From assembly GCF_001194135.2 (NCBI RefSeq), contig NC_068988.1, positions 40,766,087 to 40,798,988 of the forward strand: a stretch of 32,902 nucleotides of DNA, written 5' to 3'. Position numbers and translations under genes: made by a program. Positions 4,141 to 31,204 of this stretch are shown here, piece by piece; positions within the stretch are counted from its first letter, which is position 1, and each line of letters starts with the position of its first letter. Origin of the DNA: Octopus bimaculoides. Taxonomy: Eukaryota. Below the pieces are notes generated by a model. That model ran no database searches and was not told the DNA's origin. It saw nothing but the letters and a program-made list of their open reading frames with translations.

Positions 4141-5059
4141 CACATTTGTTCATTAATATAATGTTCGAAGCATGACGGTTATGATCATGTTTCATGTCGT
4201 GACTGTTCGATTTTGTTTGCCTTTTAGACTTAGTCTTGTCAAACTGTATGTTTAACACACCTAATGCTTACTCTATCTGTTATCTGTTGTTGCTGCAGTT
4301 GTTTTTGTTATTGTCTCATTTCTCTTATCATCCCACTTAATCATTGTTTCCATATGCCTTTCCCATTCAGTAAGTTGATGTTGCTTGTATGTCGTTTAAC
4401 CTCACGTCACCCTTAATCTAACAAACTTGTAAGCTGTTGTTTAACTGTAGGTCGGTCCTAATCCAACAAATCTATGATCAATTGTGCTCATTTCTGTTTT
4501 ATTATTATTATTTTATTTTTTGTCTTACTAGTTTCAGTTTAGACTGATANNNNNNNNNNGAACAAAAACGCAATAGAGGGCATTAAAACGTTCGGACAGA
4601 TAGACGATAGAAAGGCGGACAAGAGAAATAACAAGATGGTTCGATCTATTACCCCCAAAAATGTCTAAGCTAAGAGCATTAAACCCCTTCGTTAGAAAGC
4701 TACCGAATGTGTACGGCAACAAAGACAAAAACAAACAAACAAAAGCACGGAGAACATGGTACACAATTACGAATACATACAAGAAATAACAGGCGTCTTT
4801 CGATTGAGAACGAATGAAATTGAGCTGGCGTATATGAAGTGAAAGCCTTAAGGCAGGAACATGGGCGATAGACACAAGAGGTATTGGCTGTGCGATTCAG
4901 GTCAAGAAAGAGAGATCATGGTTGGCCGGACACCGATCATGTGGAAGGAGGAGAGATGGGTGGGGGACAGCGTGATTGAAGGATTAGAAAAAAAAATCAG
5001 AGACAAAGAGAAAGGTACAAGGGAGATAAACGAGTAGGAAATAATGGGAGTTATATCTA

Positions 5060-7984: not shown

Positions 7985-8111
7985 TTATCTGTGTGTGTAT
8001 ATNNNNNNNNNNNNNNNNNNNNNNNNNNNNNNNNNNNNNNNNNNNNNNNNNNNNNNNNNNNNNNNNNNNNNNNNNNNNNNNNNNNNNNNNNNNNNNNNNN
8101 NNNNNNNNNNN

Positions 8112-9282: not shown

Positions 9283-9761
9283 TTGTATGCATGTATGTAT
9301 GTATGTAATATATATATGTATGTATGTAATATATATATGTACATATGATTGACGCCGAGTGACACACGGGTTCAATATTAGGATTATTTGAAGAAACAAC
9401 AGCAAACTCATCGTCGGAACTGACGAAAATCCATTTACTTTTTGCTATCTATATCAGTAAATATACACACACATAAATATATGTACATACATCTCTACGC
9501 AAATGCCATGTGTATCCATATATATATATATCCATATATATNNNNNNNNNNNNNNNNNNNNNNNNNNNNNNNNNNNNNNNNNNNNNNNNNNNNNNNNNNN
9601 NNNNNNNNNNNNNNNNNNNNNNNNNNNATATATATGCGTATATGTGTGCGCGTGTATGTGTGTGTGAATGCATATACGTATGTATTTTGTATGTACGTAC
9701 GCGTATATGAATTTACCTCTTAGTTCTTTTCCTGTATTTGTAAATGTTAAAAATGTGTCTG

Positions 9762-9800
<39 letters not shown>

Positions 9801-10399
9801 CTGCGTGTGTCTGTGTATGCGCGTGTGACCGATGTAGTTGAAGTGTGAATCAAGACTCAAACCTGTTCAGTGCACGATACAGATGACTGATAACTTAACA
9901 CGTACAACACAGGTACGAGTTAGAAACGAGCAGGGCGTGGTACACATGAAAGGCGTATGATGCGTTACATTGAGAAAGCAGTCTGCACTTTATTGATCCA
10001 TCGTAACTAATCGCTACTTTGCGTCAGTCGATCTCCTTTTAATCTTTCCTTTCTACACATGCACGCGGCTATATTCGAATGTACGTGTGTGTGTGTGTGT
10101 GTGCGTGTGTGCGTGTTGTTATTGGGTTAATGCTTTTCTTTTATTACATAGTATGCACTTGGATTCACCGTCCCACATTTACTCATATTTATACATACAC
10201 AAACTCTTACTCTATCCTTTGTATTGAACTCTTTCTTAATATTACCTACCCGATAGGTAAACTGTCACCTTTTGGGTAAATTGTCATCTTTTCGTATTTT
10301 TAATTTCGCGCAAGCGCATTCTTTGCTTTTGATTTTGTTGACTAAACAGTATAGTAGGTTCAGTTGGGCACCATCTGTGAGAAAAAGAACACCACACAC

Positions 10400-11030
10400 A
10401 ATTCACTCTGCCAGAAATTTGGAAACGACATGCAGTATTACTTGGTATTCACGCCGGACGCTCCAGTGCGAACATATCAGAGTGTTTGTGTGTCAATCTG
10501 AGGACAGTGTAATCTGAGGACATGTACTGTACCGAGAGTGATAAAAATCAAACATCCAGTCAACGTCATGGTGTTTGGAGTGATCACTAGTGATGGCGAC
10601 GTTATGCCTCCATTCATCTTCCCACAGAGCCTCAGAATCTACACGGAGGCCTACATCAACGAGGTAGTACTGCCCTGAGTGACGAGGGTGGCTGCGGGAA
10701 GACCCCATGTCTGGCAGCAAGACTCTGCACCATGCCACACAGGAAAGAGAACCTACACATGTCTGACAGACAATTTCTGCGACCACATCACCCGTAACAT
10801 CTAGACACCTAACTCCCCAGACTGCAACCCCCTTGATTATTATGTGTGGGGTGCAGTTGAGTGAGAGACCAACAAAACTCCTTGTAACACCAAAGATATC
10901 TGGAGTCTGCAGTTGAAGCCAATGGCGATTTTATTGAATAAATTTACTCTTTAGTATTTCAAGATATTTTAATGTAATTTAGTAAATATATCTGTTAAAA
11001 TGAGATATCAGAGTTGTTTTCATTTTCGCG

Positions 11031-11033
<3 letters not shown>
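10400..11033 (+). mobile_element. Internally deleted Tc1/mariner transposon, maT (DD37D) type
   Basis: N-terminal FTLPEIWKRHAVLLGIHAGRSSANISECLCVNLRTV; catalytic part KHPVNVMVFGVITSDG...WQQDSAPCH...PNSPDCNPLDYYVWG. D at 10721 and D at 10835 are separated by 37 codons. Duplicated AATCTGAGGACA near the deletion junction (~10495-10522). Confidence 0.85.
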
Positions 11034-11063
<30 letters not shown>

Positions 11064-11419
11064 NNNNNNNNNNNNNNNNNNNNNNNNNNNNNNNNNNNNN
11101 NNNNNNNNNNNNNNNNNNNNNNNNNNNNNNNNNNNNNNNNNNNNNNNNNNNNNNNNNNNNNNNNNNNNNNNNNNNNNNNNNNNNNNNNNNNNNNNNNNNN
11201 NNNNNNNNNNNNNNNNNNNNNNNNNNNNNNNNNNNNNNNNNNNNNNNNNNNNNNNNNNNNNNNNNNNNNNNNNNNNNNNNNNNNNNNNNTAAGATAATGA
11301 GAGTGAAAAAACTACAGAAGGCTTGTGTTACATGGTTAAAATATATATTTAAATTATGTCAGAAAAATGTTATAAAATATTTTTGGTATATAAACATTGT
11401 ATTTTGAGAAATAACCGGT

Positions 11420-12964: not shown

Positions 12965-13178
12965 TTCTTTTCTACTCTAGGCATAAGGCCTGAAATTTTG
13001 GGGGAGGAGGCTAGTCGATTATATCGACCCAGTACGCAACAGGTACTTAATTTATCGACTCGGAAAGGATAAAAGGCAAAGTAGACCTCGGCGGAATTTG
13101 AACTCAGAACATAAAGACAGACGAAATACCGCTAAGCATTTCGCCCGGCGTGCTAACGTTTCTGCCAGCCCGCCGCCT
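12965..13178 (-). mobile_element. tRNA-derived SINE, head + conserved central domain + GCCTTGTGCCTAGAGTAGAAAAGAAT-type tail
   Basis: Minus strand: GGCGGCGGGCTGGCAGAAACGTTAGCACGCC (A box)...GAGTTCAAATTCC (B box)...TTTGCCTTTTATCCTTTCCGAGTCGATAAATTAAGTACC. From memory the central segment resembles the Meta/Sauria-type SINE domain. Extra tail fragment at ~12910-12960; partial copy at 13215-13330. Confidence 0.85.
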
Positions 13179-14825: not shown

Positions 14826-14843
14826 AACAACAACAACAATAAC

Positions 14844-14878
<35 letters not shown>

Positions 14879-14891
14879 TAATAACAATAAT
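14826..14891. repeat. (AAC)/(AAT)n microsatellite
   Basis: Direct reading of the sequence. Confidence 0.9.
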
Positions 14892-15879
14892 GATTTCTTT
14901 TATTTGCCATAAGGGAGAAGGATGAGGAGGACAATACAAAGACAGACATAAAGGGTGGGGTTTACATATAATGAAATGATTAAAAAAAGACAAAAGAAAG
15001 AATACACGGTATACACTGAAAGAGATGGGACATGTGCACAGCATATAAAGGTTTAACCCCCCCCCCCCAAAAAAAAAGTAGCAGGGAGGATGTTAGAGAT
15101 GTGGCCCTCTTGATACAGGAAGGCCTCTAGGGATAATTGAGGAGCCCCACTGTCCGAGATTTCCCTGAAACCCCAGGAGCAAGTGCCCTCTCCAATTCCT
15201 TCTCGCCGTCTCACAAGTCTACACTTAGAGAAACACCATCCACTTTTGCTATTTTCACAACTTCACCCACCTTTCAATAAACTCGCTCGAGGACAACACT
15301 TCCCTCTCCACACTCAGTTTCCTTATCAACTGAAACAAGAAGTCAATGAGAGCTCTACCAAAGAGGAATGTATCTGTCCTCATGCCTTTCAGCTTTGTCC
15401 ACCGAGCAACCTCTTTCGCCACTGCCACCAGGCAAAGGAAAACTGCCTTGCCTACCCGACTGAAGGGCGACGGTGTGGTCATCACTACAGACTCGGCCGA
15501 CAGACGGATCCGTCCCACACGTGACAGTAGCTGTTCGACATAAACTCACAAGTCAGTAATGCCCGGACACTGAACAAGAGCGTGCAGAACGGTTTCGTCA
15601 CTCTGAGCGCACCTCGTGCAAGCTCGTCTGACAGCACATCTGTGCCTGTAGAGTTTATATCGAACCGGTAGCACCCACCGGTAGCACCCACCGGTAGCAC
15701 TGCCAGGCCAAGAACATCTGGAAATTATCCATGATAGTTCTGACTGGAAAGTCCTCCGGAACAGACTAGCCAGTTCGCTCACGTCGGCACCCAGATTCTC
15801 CTCGAGAGTGACGTCACACTTCCCCGCCACTAATCCTCTATAAATTTCTAAGCGGAACATCCGTAATCCTATTGCCCGA
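14892..15879 (-). mobile_element. 5'-truncated Tx1/L1-clade LINE: ORF2 C-terminus with zf-RVT-like Cys/His motif and 3' UTR
   Basis: LPVRYKLYRH...RACTRCAQSDETVLHALVQCP...FLCLVAVAKEVARWTKLKG...FIERWV; 3' end CCCTTATGGCAAATAAAAGAAATCA followed by (TTA)n; (TAA)n also at the 5' junction (15880-15892). Confidence 0.8.
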
Positions 15880-15892
15880 CTAATAATAATAA

Positions 15893-16689: not shown

Positions 16690-16899
16690 ATCCTTTCTGC
16701 TATAGACACAAGGCTTGAAATTTTGCGGGAGGCGAGTAGTCGATTACATCCACCCCCAGTGTTTCACTGGTACTTAATTTATCGACCAAGAAAGGATGAA
16801 AGGTAAAGTCGACCTCGGTGGAATTTGAACTGAGAACGTAAAGACGGACGATATGCCGTTAAGCGTTTTTCCGGTGTGCAAATGATTCTGCCAGCTCGC
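16690..16899 (-). mobile_element. tRNA-derived SINE (family of 12965-13178) whose tail runs into (TTA)n
   Basis: Same head, central domain and tail motifs as 12965-13178. Confidence 0.8.
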
Positions 16900-21390: not shown

Positions 21391-22540
21391 ACGCTTGTGC
21401 CACTTTTAAGATTAAAGTGTATGAGTTGAGTGAGATTTAGCTGCTGTTTCTCGCAGGTCCAGTAACTCCATAGTATCTCTCTCATTGACTCATTTCGGTT
21501 TTCAGTACAGATAAGGTCTTGCAAATTGACTGATCGATGGCTTGAGTAACTTATCTAATGAGTGACGTTCTTGCTATGTAGGAAAACGAAAATCCTTTTT
21601 GATTCAAATACTAATTTTAATTGCTTGAGCCATAAAGCTAACAAAACGCGTGAAACATTTTACTGTTGTTTTAATGGTGCAGAATATTAAAATATGCTGT
21701 AAGGGGTCCATGCAAACCTCTGCTGTTACTTTTTAAAGAATACAATCAGTTCATATGCCTTGTAAAACATCAGAAGTTTTTTTTTTTTTCTTTTTTTTTT
21801 AACCTAGGCACATTATATGAAAATCCGTCGTTTCATGAAAATATATCAAATACATTATAGAAAATAAATCACTGAAGTTACTTACTCAGAGAGGCCACCT
21901 GTAAAAGAAAAGGAACAAGAGCTAATCTAATGTTAGCATTAGTGTATTGTGCATCAAAAGTTCAGTTATAAATATTTATGCTATGAGAAAACGACATTAG
22001 CTGATAGATTACTATTACTTAAAATAGTTAAGTATGAGAAACAATTTCGAAACATTGCGGTTTTATTAGAACTCCTCAGTGAAAATGTTGACTTTATGAT
22101 GCTTGTCACAAAAGATATCCTAAAAGTAGTTATCAAATCCATTAGCACTAATTTCTGAGCTCAAAATCTGTAGGATTTTTTGTTGTTGTTAGTTTGTTAT
22201 TAAAGGATGTTATTTAAAAAAAAATAGTTATAAAAAATAAGTAGGAATATATACAAGTTAATTTCATCACTACAGCATATCATTTGAATAATTAAAGAAA
22301 AAAAGAATTATGAAAGTGGCAAAATTATTAGGAAAATACACTAACAGAAAAAGTAAATTGACTGACAAAATAATTAGTGACTTTGAATTCAAACGCCATC
22401 GAAGTCAACTTCAATTTTCTTCCTTCTGGTGTTGATAAAACAAGCAACAATCAGGAATTATGTTTGATGTAATCAACTGTTCTCTACATACAAAGCATGT
22501 GACTATTTGAGCATACTAGAAATCAACATTAGTGACTTAA

Positions 22541-22738
22541 TGCTTCTCATTTTGGCACAAGGCCAACAATTTCGGGAGAGTGGGTAAATCGATTACATCG
22601 ACTACAGTGCTCAAGTGGTACTTATTTTATCGACCCCGAAACGATGAAAGGCAAAGTCGATCTTGGCAGAATTTGAATTCATAACGTATAGACAAACGAA
22701 ATGCCGCTAAGCATTTTGCCTGGCATGCTAACGATTCT
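22541..22738 (-). mobile_element. tRNA-derived SINE interrupted in its A-box by the 22739-24454 element
   Basis: Tail, central domain and B box present; the head starts at AGAATCGTTAGCATGCC, and the first ~14 nt (GGCGGCGAGCTGGC) are not adjacent. Confidence 0.85.
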
Positions 22739-24454
22739 AATTTTTTTTATTACCCATTACGGGGCGAACATAGAGGGCAAAATACACATGTGGGGACATA
22801 CAAACAGAGAAAAAAATAGAACCAACGTATGAAAAAATGACAGGAAAAGTGAAATGAAAAATAGAATGAAGCCACTCCCCCCACTTCATAGCAGCTTCAT
22901 TTATACCTTTTAAACTTCGTTCCCGCTAGAATATCGATTCCAAATTCTTCCACCACTTCCTCATATGTCATATACTGTGGTAATACGTCCCAATCCATTT
23001 TACCCCACAACATCTATAGCCGCTTTTAAATCTGTTACTTTTTCTCTGTTTATCCGAGCAAAACGTGCAACAGTGCTATCCCTTTATGTTGTCAAAACTC
23101 ATTGTTCCAACTGTTTCAAAGTGTTTCCAAGATAACACTTCTTTACACAGTTTTTCATAGAGTCATCATACATTACTGCGTGGCATATTTTCTTTTTTCG
23201 TTTTTCTTTTTTTGTCTGGTGGAGGGAGTTTAGGAGTTCTTGTCTGTTTGTACATTTTTCTGTGTCAGACAGGTGATGATCAGGTTTGGTGTCTGTAGGG
23301 GGAGGGTGGGTCGATGAGGGTGTGGGTGGGTGTTGGGTGGTTATGGGGTTTAATATTTTTCTTTTTCACTTGTCCCTTTTTCCTATTGTTTCCCATTCGC
23401 TGTCTGTTTCTTTCTTCTCTACTTCTGTTGATGTTTTTTCTTCCTCTTTATTTTCTTGCTCTCTCTGGCGCTTTCCCTCTTGTATCTCCTCCGTCTTTTT
23501 GGTCGGTGAAGGACAGACCGCCCTGATGTGGCCCTTTAGGCCACATCTAAAGCATCGACGGATTTTGCCCTCCACCCTGATCCTCATTATCACGTTGTCC
23601 ATAATTATCGTTTCAGTAATGTTTTCTAGGGTTTCGGTTGAACCTTGAATAATCATGTCCAGTATCTGTCCCTTCCATATAGCACTTTGCGTTTTTTAAT
23701 CCAGGAGAACCGCTATGTTGTCCTCATTTCCCAGAAGGACAGCCACATCTATTTCTGGCGGAATTCCTTCCACCCTAACTCTGGTCGCACGTTATCCGCG
23801 GTAAGTGGGCAAAAGCACCACTTCCTCACTCTTAATGGAAGTTGCTGCGTGCTTTTTTGCTGTTGCCGCGTCCTTGAATCTCACCTCCACTACTCCGACC
23901 TTAGTACCTCTCGCAAGGTATACAACTTCATGCCACATTGGTCTTAACGCTTTCTCTATTTAACCCGTGGTCATGACGTCAATTTTTCCTTCAATTATTG
24001 AAAATGTTTTGTACAAAATTGTTCTATCTTTCGTATTATTAAGCGTCTCTTGCGGTAGTTGGATTGGGTGACAATTTAACGTCAGATCTATCCCGACTTG
24101 ATAAATTTTTGTAATTTTCAAATTCACCAATATCAATATCATTTTCCTGGCACTTTGCCTTGTCCGCAAAGTTTCTCTTTTCTTCATTTAATTTTTCGTC
24201 CATTTTCTTGGCCGTTTTCAAAAATTCTTCCTCTGAAGACGACATATCTGAAAAGCTGAAGTCTTCTTCAGACATTCTTTTCACTAAGCCGACCCTCTTC
24301 TATGAGGAGGGGAAGAACAAACAAACTGCTGCAAAGCAGTGCAAAAACAATTAACGAAGCGTCTCAAACACTGATGCAAAAACAAACAAAATAATGATAA
24401 CACTCTGAAAATACCGTCCAAAATTAATCAAGTACACCGTGAATAACACAGGAA
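22739..24454 (-). mobile_element. ORF1-only (HAL1-like) non-LTR retroposon, ~1.7 kb, poly(A)-tailed, with 16-bp TSD
   Basis: TSD GCATGCTAACGATTCT (22723-22738) / GCGTGCTAACGATTCT (24455-24470); AATAAAAAAAA at the 3' end; ~180-nt 5' UTR; disrupted ORF1 from 24275 to ~22897; no EN or RT motifs seen. Confidence 0.8.
22897..24275 (-). pseudogene. Gag/ORF1p-like protein (acidic N-terminus, RRM-like region, CCHC zinc knuckle, P/T-rich linker, C-terminal domain), broken by stops and frameshifts
   Basis: MSEEDFSFSD...; RTILYKTFS...RGTKVGVVEVRFKDAATAKKH...TRVRVEGIPPEID...RIRVEGKIRRCFRCGLKGHIRAVCP (C-X2-C-X4-H-X4-C); ends ...DWDVLPQYMTYEEVVEEFGIDILAGTKFKRYK*. Confidence 0.75.
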
Positions 24455-24470
24455 GCGTGCTAACGATTCT

Positions 24471-24702
24471 TATTTCTTTATTGCCCACAAGGGGCTAAAC
24501 ACAGAGGGGACAAACGAGGACAGACAAAGAGATTAAGTCGATTACATCGACCCCAGTGCGTAACTGGTACTTAATTTATCGACCCCGAAAGGATGAAAGG
24601 CAAAATTGACCTCGACGGAATTTGAACTCAGAACGTAACGGCAGACGAAATACCGCTAAGTATTTCAGCCAGCGTGCTAACGTTTCTGCCAGCTCGCCGC
24701 CT
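24471..24702 (-). mobile_element. Full-length tRNA-derived SINE with an alternative, Tx1-like 3' tail
   Basis: Head GGCGGCGAGCTGGCAGAAACGTTAGCACGC, B box GAGTTCAAATTCC, central domain, then tail CTTTGTCTGTCCTCGTTTGTCCCCTCTGTGTTTAGCCCCTTGTGGGCAATAAAGAAATA. Confidence 0.9.
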
Positions 24703-25054: not shown

Positions 25055-25200
25055 GCTTTGACACAATGTCAGCAGTTTTTGAAGGAAGAAGTCAATTACA
25101 TCGACCCCGTACTTAACTGGTACTTTATTGTGTCGTCCCCGAAATGATGGCAGAAAAGTTGACCTCAGTAGTATTTGAACTCAGAACGTAACGACGAACA
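25055..25200 (-). mobile_element. Degenerate partial copy of the tRNA SINE
   Basis: ATTACATCGACCCCGTACTTAACTGGTAC...TTGACCTCAGTAGTATTTGAACTCAGAACGTAACG. Confidence 0.7.
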
Positions 25201-25872
25201 AAATTAACCTCGATTTCTTCGAAAATCTCATTGCCACCAACTCTTTTCGCGACACACCTCAACAGCTGCTAAATCTACGCCAGATCTCACTCTACCGTTT
25301 TAAAAGTGAAAACTCATTGAATAATGTTGACTTGAGTACATTATTAGCTGAAAAAAAAAAAAAACAGGTTGATCATAGTTGTAAAATATTCTCTCATAGA
25401 CATGCTGAATCACAGCGGATCTGGAGCTAAGTAACAGCAACAAAAACATTCTCAGTTTTCGTAGCAACACCAAGCATGCACCCCCACCCTATGTGTGCGT
25501 GTGTGTGTGTATGCATGCATATATCGTGTTTCTATACTTTATTGTTTTCCAGACGGTTAAGCACATTTTGACAGAAATCTAGATGCAAATTTACACGAGT
25601 GCAGAGTTTGTAAAGAAATTCATCGGCTGACTAGTGTTTCTCTGTCGTATTGTGCTGGTATGTGCAAGTTTTCCTGTGTTACGGATCGTCGTATTTTTTT
25701 AAGAGTGTTACAGTCAATTATTATTTTGTGCAACATTGGTGGCATCCTAGTTACGTGATTAATGTTCTTTTGTGTAGAATATGCTTTGAAGGAACGTGTG
25801 CCTTGAATGAATTTGCAACTTGCGCATTGAGTGAGGTTATCAGCTGTTGCTGTTATTCTTTGGATGCAGGAA

Positions 25873-26290
25873 GGCGGCGTCTTGACAGAATCTTTACTAC
25901 ACCGGTCAAAATGCTTAGTGATATTTCGTTCGTTTTTATGTTCTGAATTCAAATTCCACCGAAGCTGACCTTTCGAGGTCGTTAAAATAAGTACCAGTTA
26001 CTTACCCCTCACCCGGAATTGCTGACCTCAAGCCAAAATTTGAAATCATTATTTGGTTGCAGGAGAGTGGAGAATTGGCAGAATCGTTAGCGCATCGGAC
26101 AAAAATCCTTAGCGGCAAGTCTTCCGACTCTTTAAGTTTTCATTTCAATTTCTCCTGTCGAAGTTAACTTTGCCTTTCATTCCACTAGAGCTGATAAAAT
26201 AAAATGCATGTCAAGCACTGGGGGTTGGGGTGATTGACTTGTCTCGCGCCTCAAAATTCCTAACCTAGTGCCAAAATTAGAACCATTTGG
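25873..26290 (+). mobile_element. Two tandem degenerate tRNA SINE copies (25873-26047 and ~26065-26285)
   Basis: Heads GGCGGCGTCTTGACAGAATC and TTGGCAGAATCGTTAGCGCATCGGAC; tails GCCAAAATTTGAAATC and GTGCCAAAATTAGAACC. Confidence 0.7.
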
Positions 26291-26524: not shown

Positions 26525-26700
26525 GTTCTTTTCTACTCTAGGCACTAGGCCCGAAATTTCGGGGAGGGGGCCAGTCGATTAGATCAACTCCAGTACGCAA
26601 CTGGTACTTAATTTATCGACCCCGAAAGGATGAAAGGCAAAGTCGATCTCGGCGGAATAAATAATCTTTTCTATTCTAGGCACAAGGCTCGAAATTCCAA
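26525..26700 (-). mobile_element. 5'-truncated tRNA SINE plus an adjacent second tail fragment
   Basis: CTACTCTAGGCACTAGGCCCGAAATT...ATCGACCCCGAAAGGATGAAAGGCAAAGTCGATCTCGGCGGAAT, then CTATTCTAGGCACAAGGCTCGAAATT. Confidence 0.8.
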
Positions 26701-30112: not shown

Positions 30113-31204
30113 GAAACCAGTTTTTAGCCAGTATTGTTCCCGGGTCCACTCTGATTCGGAATAGTAGCATCTGTCAGAGCCCAAGCTATGTGTTAACTAG
30201 TGTCTGTGATGACTTTCCATTTGAGTGCAATGCTAAGAAATGCACTTGGTTGATGTCAGGATGCACAATAAAACCACTGAGTGTGAGGAACCCTTGGCTT
30301 TTATCACAGTATCCTTCAAGGAGAGGGACACTCTGATGAAAAACCTGCGGTTTCACGTGATCACTAGCCATCTAACTTCGCTCTGGCACTAGGTATTAAT
30401 CACGGAGACTCAGAGAGTGTACTCGTGTTGTACAACAGTTTATCACTATAATCCGGTGATTTACAAATGTCTCTTTATGGTGACTTCATTTGTCATCCCA
30501 TCAGCTGAAAGTTCTGTAGCGATAGAACAGGGTGACATGAGCAAACCTATCCAGTTGGAAGCGCGCAGTAAGTTACAACTTGCGTCTGTCCCTTATGCTC
30601 CAAACCGTAAAGATGTGCAACGGGACAGAATAGTCATCTAAAGGGTGATGGGTGGAAAATCAGAAACGCCAGCGAGGAAGCGAAAGGAGACAGCTATCAT
30701 CTGAAATGGAACAATCACCATATNNNNNNNNNNNNNNNNNNNNNNNNNNNNNNNNNNNNNNNNNNNNNNNNNNNNNNNNNNNNNNNNNNNNNNNNNNNNN
30801 NNNNNNNNNNNNNNNNNNNNNTATATATATATAATATGATATAATATAATATAATATTAATATAATATAATATAATATAATATGCATGTATGTATATATG
30901 TGTGTATGTATAGTGGAAAAATACGTCTTTCTTTTTTTTTTATATAAATATCGATTGACTATACATTGGAAGTGTAAAAGGAAACAGCATGCATGAGTGA
31001 ATAAAACTGAATATTATGCATTGGTCTATTTCATTTGAAGAAGCTGTTGCGCATTATCATGGAACTTTGATCCAGTCAGTATTCCTGTATAAGATTTGAC
31101 ACTCAAATAGAGGATATGATTAAGAAGTATCATCATATAATTTAATTTGTTTTACTAGCACGCCTCCCAAAACTCTTCTTTATGTTTTTTTTTATATATA
31201 TTTA

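What the first reader, a model, noticed from the sequence alone, without database searches (positions are those of the whole stretch)
22723..24470. ORF1-only (half-LINE) retroposon inserted with a 16-bp TSD inside a SINE A-box
Seen in sequence: a 1716-bp minus-strand element with a 5' UTR, one gag-like ORF (RRM-like region + CCHC knuckle, ~460 codons, decayed), a ~160-nt 3' UTR and AATAAAAAAAA. It is bounded by GC(A/G)TGCTAACGATTCT on both sides, and no EN or RT motif is visible. Established: ORF1-only HAL1 elements arise from L1-clade LINEs, and several Tx1 families are target-specific (Keno/U2, Mutsu/5S, Dewa/tRNA arrays, Kibi and Koshi/microsatellites). Inference: this is a complete non-autonomous family supplying only ORF1p and inserted into the Pol III promoter of an abundant tRNA SINE. 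I do not recall such an element described for cephalopods.
Basis: partly seen in the sequence, partly recalled or inferred. Interest (0 to 1): 0.85.

Follow-up and report, generated by a model that had tools for sequence, protein, structure and literature searches.

The report
Half-LINE targeting an octopus SINE
A dead copy of a jumping gene that has lost its copying enzyme and kept only its RNA-binding protein gene sits at one precise spot inside a very abundant octopus repeat. A second, very divergent copy in another octopus genome sits at exactly the same spot, which points to an undescribed site-specific "half-LINE" lineage.

Summary
Window 24454-22739 (minus strand) is a 1716-nt retroposon with a 179-nt 5'UTR, a decayed ~459-codon ORF1 and a 158-nt 3'UTR ending AATAAAAAAAA. 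ORF1 has two RRM-like domains, a CCHC knuckle, a linker and a C-terminal domain. There is no EN/RT. The element is flanked by a 15/16-identical 16-mer.

Its ORF1 and 3' tail are homologous to those of an autonomous two-ORF L1/Tx1-type LINE found in Octopus vulgaris, so it is an ORF2-less derivative.

The decisive result is a second, very divergent ORF2-less element in Octopus sinensis (about 37-40% amino-acid identity). It is colinear with the window element end to end. It splits the same SINE at the same nucleotide with the same 16-bp duplication. This argues for a propagating, site-specific ORF1-only lineage rather than a one-off deletion.

Upstream of the element lies the LINE-type tail of another SINE, not a SINE head. 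The site seems to have been used twice, giving a tandem array.

Not verified: the tRNA/A-box identity of the site, copy number, and the autonomous partner. I rate it a new variant of known kinds (HAL1, HeT-A, target-specific Tx1).

The parts
24688..24701 (-). SINE head (GCGGCGAGCTGGC...), probably the head of the original target SINE
   Evidence: The same head precedes the 16-mer in 12 uninterrupted SINE copies.
24672..24687 (-). 16-mer copy A (AGAAACGTTAGCACGC on the minus strand)
24471..24671 (-). SINE1: SINE body plus a ~60-nt LINE-type 3' tail (...GTCCCCTCTGTGTTTAGCCCCTTGTGGGCAATAAAGAAATA). This is a SINE subfamily mobilised through the L1/Tx1 tail.
   Evidence: the tail aligns to the element tail with score 64, against 29 +/- 5.5 (maximum 51) in shuffles; same tail as the L001 LINE. 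SINE1-type copies are also present in L005.
24455..24470 (-). 16-mer copy B, the 5' target-site duplication of the ORF1-only element (AGAATCGTTAGCACGC)
24276..24454 (-). 5'UTR of the ORF1-only element (179 nt)
22897..24275 (-). Decayed ORF1, about 459 codons with at least 5 stops and at least 3 frameshifts. It comprises an acidic N-terminus, two RRM-like domains (about 24025-23564), a CCHC knuckle, a K/E- and P/T-rich linker and a C-terminal domain (23185-22900).
   Evidence: Searches give the AF2 model of homolog P0036 and its tandem-RRM fold matches.
23513..23554 (-). CCHC zinc knuckle CFRCGLKGHIRAVC
   Evidence: zf-CCHC, E=0.05 in this decayed copy; homolog P0002 scores 23.7 bits, above the cut-off; nucleocapsid knuckles in the PDB.
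22739..22896 (-). 3'UTR module (158 nt). It starts right after a retained ATG that aligns with the ORF2 start of the autonomous relative. It ends with the conserved tail ...GCCCTCTATGTTCGCCCCGTAATGGGTAATAAAAAAAATT.
   Evidence: aligns to the last ~145 nt of the L001 3'UTR; colinear with L005..
22723..22738 (-). 16-mer copy C, the 3' target-site duplication (AGAATCGTTAGCATGC)
22535..22722 (-). Remainder of the target SINE: body with the B-box-like GAATTCAAATTCT and the common, different 3' tail ...GGCCTTGTGCCAAAATGAGAAGCATT
   Evidence: (repeat D1).

Best explanation
The element is a dead copy of an ORF2-less (ORF1-only) non-LTR retrotransposon derived from an octopus L1/Tx1-type LINE.

What it keeps: the 5'UTR; ORF1, a type-I ORF1p with two RRM-like domains and a CCHC knuckle plus a linker and a C-terminal domain; the inter-ORF junction with what looks like the ORF2 start codon; and the ~150-nt 3' module with the conserved LINE tail. 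It lacks the whole endonuclease/reverse-transcriptase ORF.

How it moves (inferred): its RNA is copied in trans by the ORF2 protein of an autonomous relative that recognises the shared 3' tail, by target-primed reverse transcription.

Where it lands (shown at n=2): in sense orientation at one defined position in the 5' head of the abundant octopus SINE. The bottom-strand nick falls between GGC and AGAA. The top-strand nick falls 16 bp downstream and gives the duplication AGAAWCGTTAGCACGC.

In the window the same site was used twice, once by a SINE subfamily carrying the same LINE-type tail (SINE1) and once by the ORF1-only element. The 5' junction of SINE1 was resolved by homology with the target's own head. 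The result is head-16mer-SINE1-16mer-element-16mer-rest of SINE. The insertion separates the head of that SINE copy from its B-box region.
For: Shown:
1. The anatomy, the 16-mers and the absence of EN/RT.
2. The ORF1 profile finds 593 relatives. One of them, P0005, lies in O. vulgaris locus L001. There ORF1 is followed 5 nt later by a 1132-aa ORF2 with Exo_endo_phos + RVT_1 + zf-RVT. Its best solved relative is human L1 ORF2p, E=2e-71.
3. The element's last ~145 nt align with that LINE's 3'UTR end. The SINE1 tail is homologous as well.
4. O. sinensis locus L005, positions 9456-11056, is a second ORF2-less element, with ORF1 open for 384 codons. It is colinear with the window element across 5'UTR, ORF1, the post-ORF1 junction and 3'UTR, at 55-68% nucleotide identity in its best-conserved stretches. 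It splits an otherwise normal SINE between ...GAGCTGGC and AGAAACGTTAGCACGC, with the 16-mer repeated as AGAAATGTTAGCACGC.
5. In about 95 kb of octopus DNA, 12 of 16 occurrences of the 16-mer lie in uninterrupted SINEs, which serve as empty sites. The other 4 are the junctions of these two elements.
6. The SINE halves flanking the two elements are about 78% identical, like any random SINE pair. The elements themselves are far more diverged. The insertions are therefore independent.
7. In the ORF1 core, pN=0.34 against pS=0.69 between the two elements, giving dN/dS of about 0.2 with dS saturated. ORF1 was under purifying selection while the lineages diverged.
8. The AF2 model of homolog P0036 has two beta-alpha-beta-beta-alpha-beta domains plus a knuckle. 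Its top fold matches are almost all tandem-RRM proteins.

Literature:
- L1-Tx1 is a recently active LINE group in O. vulgaris (PMC13282606).
- Tx1-clade LINEs and their SINEs share specific targets, including other transposons, and pile up in tandem there (PMC4494074).
- Type-I ORF1p (RRM+CCHC) is typical of Tx1 (PMC5203782).
Against: - Only two full ORF2-less copies, plus the P0001 fragment, could be retrieved. Copy number is unknown.
- No autonomous LINE was seen at the SINE site. The autonomous relatives found sit in a self-tandem array (L001) or next to (ATT)n (window 14897-15880).
- Other carriers of the tail insert elsewhere: SINE1-type copies in L005, and a tail-only fragment in L002 with an 11-bp TSD at another SINE position. 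The shared tail alone therefore does not enforce the site.
- The two ORF1-only elements are almost as far from each other (dN 0.44) as from the autonomous L001 ORF1 (dN 0.55-0.59). Independent ORF2 losses cannot be excluded.
- The double-use model for the window is an inference. An outer TSD of the original SINE could not be demonstrated.
Confidence: 0.7

Rival explanations
1. One-off internal deletion. A full-length two-ORF LINE lost ORF2 once, either during reverse transcription or after insertion. The match with L005 is a coincidence of two unrelated deletion derivatives.
For: - Internal-deletion derivatives with other breakpoints exist. L002 9740-10668 joins 5'UTR plus 2/3 of ORF1 directly to the 3' module.
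- The window and L005 elements are very divergent.
- HAL1s and Drosophila ORF1-only elements arise repeatedly (PMC5753468, PMC13534243).
Against: - Window and L005 share the same end points: ORF1 stop, retained ATG, then the same TGGGGNG... start of the 3' module.
- They share the same insertion site and the same TSD.
- A random deletion would rarely remove just ORF2 twice and also land in the same nucleotide of a SINE twice.
Confidence: 0.12
2. Homing is directed by RNA homology, not by a sequence-specific endonuclease. Read-through transcripts of a copy already sitting in a SINE carry downstream SINE sequence. That sequence anneals to nicked SINE DNA and guides priming to the same position, and a co-transcribed upstream head helps the 5' junction.
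For: - Other elements with the same tail insert at other sites, which suggests a relaxed endonuclease.
- SINEs make up about 11.6% of the O. vulgaris genome (PMC13282606), so homologous targets are everywhere.
- The 5' junction of SINE1 in the window looks homology-resolved.
- Co-transcription with the target is known to strengthen targeting in R2 and R1 (discussed in PMC4494074).
Against: - There is no direct evidence of read-through RNAs.
- The element has its own AATAAA signal right at its end.
- A fixed 16-bp TSD implies reproducible nicks on both strands, which is more typical of endonuclease specificity.
Confidence: 0.2
3. Composite unit. The SINE with the element inside it is what gets copied, as a long SINE mobilised through the SINE's own tail or by segmental duplication. 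The 16-mers would then be inherited, not made anew.
For: In both loci the element is followed by the SINE body with the common tail. A SINE-type leader (ATTGTTTCACA) recurs at the L005 boundaries.
Against: - The flanking SINE parts are about 78% identical, no closer than random SINE pairs, while the elements are much more diverged.
- The window copy lacks a simple head on its 5' side and has SINE1 instead.
- T-runs in the 5'UTR would stop Pol III.
Confidence: 0.05
4. Processed pseudogene of a host (domesticated) gag-like gene, retroposed by a LINE.
For: NCBI and UniProt list relatives as uncharacterised proteins or genes. There is an AATAAA plus an A-run at the 3' end.
Against: - The 3' end is the specific LINE tail, not a plain poly(A).
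- ORF1 is directly followed by ORF2 in L001.
- There are hundreds of decayed fragments.
- There is a TSD in a repeat.
Confidence: 0.03

Closest known systems
HAL1 (half-L1) of mammals
   Same: It is a non-autonomous LINE derivative that keeps 5'UTR, ORF1 and the 3' end and lacks ORF2. It depends on ORF2p in trans. HAL1s arose several times (PMC5753468).
   Different: HAL1 ORF1p is type II (Transposase_22: coiled coil, RRM, CTD). Here ORF1p is type I (two RRM-like domains plus a CCHC knuckle), and Pfam finds no Transposase_22. HAL1 is not known to be site-specific and uses a poly(A) tail. This element has a specific 3' tail and a specific target. The host phylum is also different.
Target-specific Tx1-clade LINEs and their SINEs (Tx1L in Tx1D; Keno in U2; Tx1-Mar with SINEU in Mariner-N4_AMi)
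   Same: It belongs to the L1-group and has a type-I ORF1p. Insertion is at a fixed position of a repeated sequence, including other transposons. SINEs share the target, and several elements stack in tandem at one target (PMC4494074). The window shows exactly such a stack.
   Different: The known cases are autonomous LINEs plus short SINEs. Here the targeted element is an ORF1-only derivative and the target is a SINE head. Tx1 membership by RT phylogeny could not be tested, and the element has no RT.
Drosophila HeT-A and other ORF1-only telomeric Jockey-clade elements
   Same: They are ORF1(gag)-only, target-specialised and dependent on ORF2 of relatives. ORF2 loss is repeated, and ORF1-only lineages give rise to further ORF1-only lineages (PMC13534243).
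   Different: They belong to a different clade (Jockey versus L1/Tx1). Their target is chromosome ends, not an interspersed repeat. They have a host-beneficial role in flies, and nothing of that kind is indicated here.
Annotated LINE/L1-Tx1 families of Octopus vulgaris
   Same: L001 is a 5.28-kb two-ORF LINE with EN+RT+zf-RVT. This fits the 13 recently active L1-Tx1 families, which have 421 insertions over 2.29 Mb, or about 5.4 kb each (PMC13282606). These are the likely source of ORF2p.
   Different: Those papers do not describe ORF1-only derivatives, SINE-head targeting, or the SINE subfamily with this LINE tail, in the texts I could search.

Membership tests
ORF1-only LINE derivative (HAL1-like architecture) | ORF1 present, ORF2 (EN/RT) absent, with both LINE ends retained | tested here: met
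   The same holds in L005.
ORF1-only LINE derivative (HAL1-like architecture) | ORF1 and 3' end homologous to an autonomous two-ORF LINE | tested here: met
   L001 has ORF1 followed by a 1132-aa ORF2. The tail alignment supports the 3' homology.
ORF1-only LINE derivative (HAL1-like architecture) | Propagates as a family: many copies with the same ORF2-less junction | tested here: inconclusive
   There are two colinear copies, one in the window (source species not identified) and one in O. sinensis, plus the P0001 fragment at 75% identity. The source genome could not be searched.
Mammalian HAL1/L1 proper | Type-II ORF1p (Pfam Transposase_22) | tested here: not met
   Pfam reports only zf-CCHC. 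The fold is tandem RRM.
Tx1 clade (L1 group) | ORF2p with APE endonuclease, RT and a C-terminal zinc-binding motif | tested here: met
   This was tested for the autonomous relative only: Exo_endo_phos + RVT_1 + zf-RVT. The best PDB relative is L1 ORF2p.
Tx1 clade (L1 group) | RT-domain phylogeny places it in Tx1 (RTclass1/Repbase) | not testable with these tools
   No Repbase or Dfam reference set was available. The only support is indirect, from the literature annotation of L1-Tx1 in octopus (PMC13282606, PMC8967140).
Tx1 clade (L1 group) | Type-I ORF1p (RRM plus CCHC knuckle) | tested here: met
   See also PMC5203782.
Target-specific non-LTR retrotransposon | Independent copies at the same nucleotide of the same target, with the same TSD | tested here: met
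   Window and L005 both insert at GGC|AGAAWCGTTAGCACGC with a 16-bp TSD. SINE1 used the same site in the window. This rests on n=2 elements only.
Target-specific non-LTR retrotransposon | An autonomous member occupies the same target | tested here: not met
   None was found in the roughly 95 kb examined. The L001 LINEs and the window LINE fragment lie elsewhere.
tRNA-derived SINE with a Pol III A box at the insertion point | tRNA-like head detectable, with an A box at the site | tested here: inconclusive
   ARAGORN and Rfam find no tRNA. TGGCAGAAACG matches 6 of 9 specified positions of TRGCNNAGTGG. A B-box-like GAGTTCAAATTCC lies about 50 nt downstream.
Processed pseudogene | Plain poly(A) end, and a parent intron-containing host gene | tested here: not met
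   The element has a specific LINE tail. Its relatives are LINE ORF1s.

The most novel reading that the evidence does not exclude
An ancient, self-perpetuating ORF1-only lineage of L1/Tx1 origin has specialised on one nucleotide position in the head of the octopus SINE. Its homing is encoded outside the endonuclease, either by its own ORF1p or by SINE sequence carried on its RNA. It would then be a parasite of a LINE's enzyme that nests in that genome's most abundant SINE. It would mirror, in a mollusc and in a different LINE clade, the link between ORF2 loss and target specialisation seen at Drosophila telomeres.
Probability: 0.15. Interest if true: 0.8.

Novelty: new variant of a known kind. 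Interest (0 to 1): 0.6.

Why it matters
ORF1-only LINE derivatives are well documented only in mammals (HAL1) and at Drosophila telomeres. In the fly case, ORF2 loss goes together with target specialisation. If this octopus lineage is confirmed, it would be a third, independent case. It lies in another LINE clade (L1/Tx1) and another phylum, and it again combines ORF2 loss with a precise target.

It would also identify three things:
- the first sequence-specific insertion site described for a cephalopod retrotransposon;
- a SINE subfamily that borrows the L1/Tx1 tail;
- a source of spurious "genes" in octopus annotations.

SINEs make up about a tenth of octopus genomes, so a retroposon that homes into them affects how repeat landscapes and nested insertions are read there.

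Tried and rejected
- Exact-protein look-ups for P0001, P0002, P0036, P0075, P0145 and the window's own 96-aa ORF found no DNA. The window's own subfamily and source genome therefore could not be sampled.
- Logan contigs L003, L006-L008 and L009 hold decayed ORF1 fragments on contigs too short, or too nested in other repeats, to show ends.
- A metagenome scan for tail+16-mer gave one chance bacterial match.
- The third homolog search was swamped by low-complexity words, with 2 hits.
- tRNA and Rfam searches of the SINE head were negative.
- A conserved hairpin in the shared tail is not supported: 2 predicted pairs and no covariation.
- An outer TSD around the whole SINE in the window is not significant.
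- A profile search of ORF1 against PDB sequences finds only zinc knuckles.
- I considered template-switch chimeras (SINE1 RNA plus element RNA) and 5' transduction. I rejected both because neither explains a 16-mer between SINE1 and the element that equals the one at the 3' flank.
Full report
**1. The observation**

On the minus strand the region reads as follows:
- SINE head (24701-24688)
- 16-mer A, AGAAACGTTAGCACGC (24687-24672)
- SINE body with an unusual tail ...CCCCTTGTGGGCAATAAAGAAATA (24671-24471; I call this unit 'SINE1')
- 16-mer B, AGAATCGTTAGCACGC (24470-24455)
- a 1716-nt element (24454-22739)
- 16-mer C, AGAATCGTTAGCATGC (22738-22723)
- SINE body with the common octopus SINE tail (22722 to about 22535)

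B and C are 15/16 identical, and the difference is a CpG>TpG change. No such match occurs in 100 shuffles.

The element has these parts:
- a 179-nt 5'UTR;
- an ORF from the ATG at 24275 to the stop at 22899-22897, about 459 codons, broken by at least 5 stops and at least 3 frameshifts;
- a CX2CX4HX4C knuckle at 23554-23513;
- a 158-nt 3'UTR ending GGGTAATAAAAAAAATT.

No other copy lies in the window. tblastn with a LINE ORF2 finds nothing inside the element. It missed 16-mer A, and it missed that the 5' neighbour of the element is the tail of another SINE.

**2. What the ORF is**

- Pfam sees only a weak zf-CCHC in the decayed copy. The intact O. bimaculoides relative P0002 passes the zf-CCHC threshold.
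- A profile search found 593 relatives. The intact ones are 330-620 aa. They share an N-terminal region, a conserved core, the knuckle, a K/E/P/T-rich linker and a C-terminal domain of about 70 aa.
- An AlphaFold model of P0036 has mean pLDDT 71, and above 85 across the core. It shows two beta-alpha-beta-beta-alpha-beta domains followed by the knuckle.
- Its best PDB fold matches are almost all tandem-RRM proteins: Prp24, raver1, Sxl, nucleolin RBD12 and hnRNP A1 UP1. The E-values are modest, 2e-3 to 3e-2.
- This is the type-I ORF1p architecture (RRM plus CCHC), which the literature associates with Tx1-type elements (PMC5203782). It is not the Transposase_22 type of mammalian L1 and HAL1.

**3. 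It belongs to a two-ORF LINE group**

- P0005 maps to Octopus vulgaris chromosome OX597840.1 (locus L001).
- There ORF1 is followed after 5 nt by a 1132-aa ORF2 carrying Exo_endo_phos, RVT_1 and zf-RVT.
- The closest solved relative of that ORF2 is human L1 ORF2p over EN plus RT, E=2e-71. R2 proteins are far weaker.
- The unit is 5.28 kb and ends ...GTCCCCTCTTTGTTGGCCCCTTGTGGGTAAATAAAATAAAA.
- The last ~145 nt of the window element align with the end of this 3'UTR.
- The last ~65 nt of SINE1 align with the element's tail. The score is 64, against 29 +/- 5.5 and a maximum of 51 in shuffles.
- The same tail motif recurs on every LINE, SINE1-type copy and derivative I recovered.
- L1-Tx1 is an annotated and recently active LINE group in O. 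vulgaris, with 13 families and 421 insertions over 2.29 Mb, or about 5.4 kb each (PMC13282606; see also PMC8967140).

The window element is therefore an ORF2-less derivative of an L1/Tx1-type LINE. SINE1 is a SINE subfamily that carries that LINE's tail.

**4. One-off or lineage? The second copy**

- P0006 maps to Octopus sinensis CM016880.1 (locus L005).
- L005 9456-11056 is a 1601-nt element. It has a 5'UTR, an ORF1 open for 384 codons (9575-10726), a frameshifted C-terminal part, about 200 nt of 3'UTR and the tail ...CAACCCTTTATGGATAAATAAAGAAATC.
- There is no ORF2 anywhere in the 20.7-kb locus.
- A global alignment with the window element is colinear from 5'UTR to tail, at 55-68% nucleotide identity in its best-conserved stretches.
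- The colinearity includes the stretch after the ORF1 stop. L005 reads AGGTAAGCGATG... and the window reads AGGTATAAATG.... In the autonomous L001 the same motif, TAAGGTAAGTGATGAAC, is the ORF1-stop/ORF2-start junction.
- Both derivatives then continue with the same 3' module, TGGGGNG...TTCAT....
- They therefore share one ORF2-less architecture.
- ORF1 cores differ at pN=0.34 and pS=0.69, giving dN/dS of about 0.2 with dS saturated. The two are old relatives whose ORF1 was under purifying selection while they diverged.
- Caveat: they are only slightly closer to each other (dN 0.44) than to the autonomous L001 ORF1 (dN 0.55-0.59). Two parallel losses of ORF2 cannot be excluded.
- Another kind of derivative exists in O. 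bimaculoides (L002 9740-10668). It joins 5'UTR plus two thirds of ORF1 to the same 3' module. Internal deletions therefore do arise repeatedly in this LINE group.

**5. The insertion site**

- In L005 the element splits an otherwise ordinary SINE. The order is...GGCGGCGTTGAGCTGGC, AGAAACGTTAGCACGC, the element, AGAAATGTTAGCACGC, then CGGGCGAAATGCTTAGC... and the common tail.
- This is the same nucleotide position, the same orientation and the same 16-bp duplication as in the window. Again the only difference between the two repeat copies is a CpG>TpG change.
- Across window, L001, L002 and L005 (about 95 kb) the 16-mer occurs 16 times. Twelve occurrences lie in uninterrupted SINEs, which serve as empty sites. 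Four are the junctions of these two elements.
- The two loci are neither orthologous nor duplicates. Their outer flanks differ. The SINE halves are about 78% identical, no closer than random SINE pairs, while the elements are much more diverged.
- Two independent hits on the same base of a ~200-nt repeat, with the same TSD length, would be very unlikely without site preference. I did not compute a formal probability.
- The preference is not a property of the tail alone. SINE1-type copies in L005 and a 75-nt tail-only insert in L002 (11-bp TSD GGTATTTAACC) sit at other positions.

**6. Reading the window locus**

- The simplest history (inference) starts from one SINE: head, 16-mer, body.
- That SINE received two insertions at the same nick site, in either order: the ORF1-only element and a SINE1 RNA.
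- For SINE1, the cDNA end (complement of its own head plus 16-mer) would anneal to the identical head plus 16-mer of the target. Second-strand synthesis would then start from there. This leaves a single head and gives head-16A-body1-tail1-16B.
- Tandem stacking of a LINE derivative and its SINE at one target, separated by the repeated target sequence, is what Kojima described for Tx1-Mar and SINEU in Mariner-N4_AMi (PMC4494074).
- I could not confirm an outer TSD of the original SINE.

**7. Mechanism, shown versus inferred**

Shown:
- the architecture;
- homology to a two-ORF L1/Tx1-type LINE;
- the shared 3' tail with a SINE subfamily;
- two independent ORF2-less copies at one SINE position with a 16-bp TSD;
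- purifying selection on ORF1.

Inferred:
- trans-mobilisation by ORF2p of an autonomous relative through recognition of the tail;
- a bottom-strand nick at GGC|AGAA and a top-strand nick 16 bp downstream;
- site choice by a sequence-specific endonuclease, as in Tx1 elements. As a rival, site choice could come from SINE sequence carried on read-through RNA.

No autonomous element was seen at this site, so the partner is unidentified. Whether the site is a Pol III A box is unresolved. No tRNA is detected by ARAGORN or Rfam. TGGCAGAAACG matches 6 of 9 specified A-box positions. A B-box-like GAGTTCAAATTCC lies about 50 nt downstream.

**8. Comparison and novelty**

- The element works like HAL1, being ORF1-only and dependent on ORF2p (PMC5753468). 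It is not a HAL1 member, because its ORF1p is type I, its tail is specific and it has a specific target.
- It behaves like target-specific Tx1 elements (PMC4494074), but it is the non-autonomous ORF1-only form and its target is a SINE head.
- The closest conceptual parallel is Drosophila HeT-A and other ORF1-only telomeric elements. There ORF2 loss is recurrent, and it is confined to target-specialised lineages (PMC13534243).
- In the papers I could search, no ORF1-only or SINE-targeting LINE is described for cephalopods.
- I rate it a new variant of known kinds, of moderate to high interest to transposon biologists.
- The main weakness is the sample: two full copies, because the source genome could not be searched.

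Noticed in passing
window 14897-15880 (minus strand): This is the 5'-truncated 3' end of another L1/Tx1-like LINE. The ORF2 C-terminus (15842-15267) is 43% identical to L001 ORF2 residues 931-1119. A ~330-nt 3'UTR and the tail ...CCCTTATGGCAAATAAAAGAAA abut an (ATT/GTT)n microsatellite at about 14840-14895.
   Followed up: partly
L001 4438-19184 (O. vulgaris OX597840.1): At least three full-length 5.28-kb LINE units lie head to tail at 99.1-99.6% identity. Each junction reads tail|CACYSGATA(A)GGACGTTAC. The right end of the array is lost in an assembly gap. The cause, repeated self-targeted insertion or tandem duplication, is undetermined.
   Followed up: partly
L002 9740-10668 and about 9520-9600 (O. 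bimaculoides CM046605.1): An internal-deletion derivative (5'UTR plus the N-terminal 2/3 of ORF1, fused to the ~95-nt 3' module) is followed directly by the 5' end of another LINE. Nearby, a 75-nt tail-only insert with an 11-bp TSD (GGTATTTAACC) sits inside a SINE at a different position.
   Followed up: partly
L001 11325-11345 and 9457-9500; L005 10895-10925; window 22880-22905: The ORF1-stop/ORF2-start junction reads like a consensus 5' splice site: AAG|GTAAGT in L001 and CAG|GTAAGC in L005. The 3' module of three different deletion derivatives starts at TGGGGNG.... In L001 that position follows ...TATCAG, 36 nt after the ORF2 stop. The deletion end points may therefore be non-random, through splicing or template switching.
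   Followed up: no
Proteins P0075, P0149, P0030, P0140: Public gene models fuse fragments of this ORF1 to unrelated genes: a Helitron Rep/helicase, a C2H2 zinc-finger protein, an LDL-receptor class A protein and an astacin protease. This is annotation contamination by the repeat. NCBI lists the L005 ORF1 as LOC118767527.
   Followed up: partly
window 13013-13178, 16707-16899, 25089-25204, 25872-26001, 26076-26223, 26541-26658: There are six further copies or fragments of the same SINE family, most with the common tail ...CAAAATTTCAGGCCTTGTGCCTATAGTAGAAAGGATT. Some tails run into (ATT)n arrays. SINE1-type copies with the LINE tail also occur at L005 6001-6164 and 18012-18216.
   Followed up: partly
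L003 1440-2600 (Logan SRR11869391): A decayed ORF1 fragment lies next to an LTR-retrotransposon gag-pol, with the knuckle CFGCGKIGHKNSHC and the RT motif YLDD. It is a nested-repeat context and was uninformative for the question.
   Followed up: no
window 4550-4559, 8003-8111, 9542-9627, 11064-11289, 30724-30821: The window contains five runs of N, which are assembly gaps. None is near the finding.
   Followed up: no
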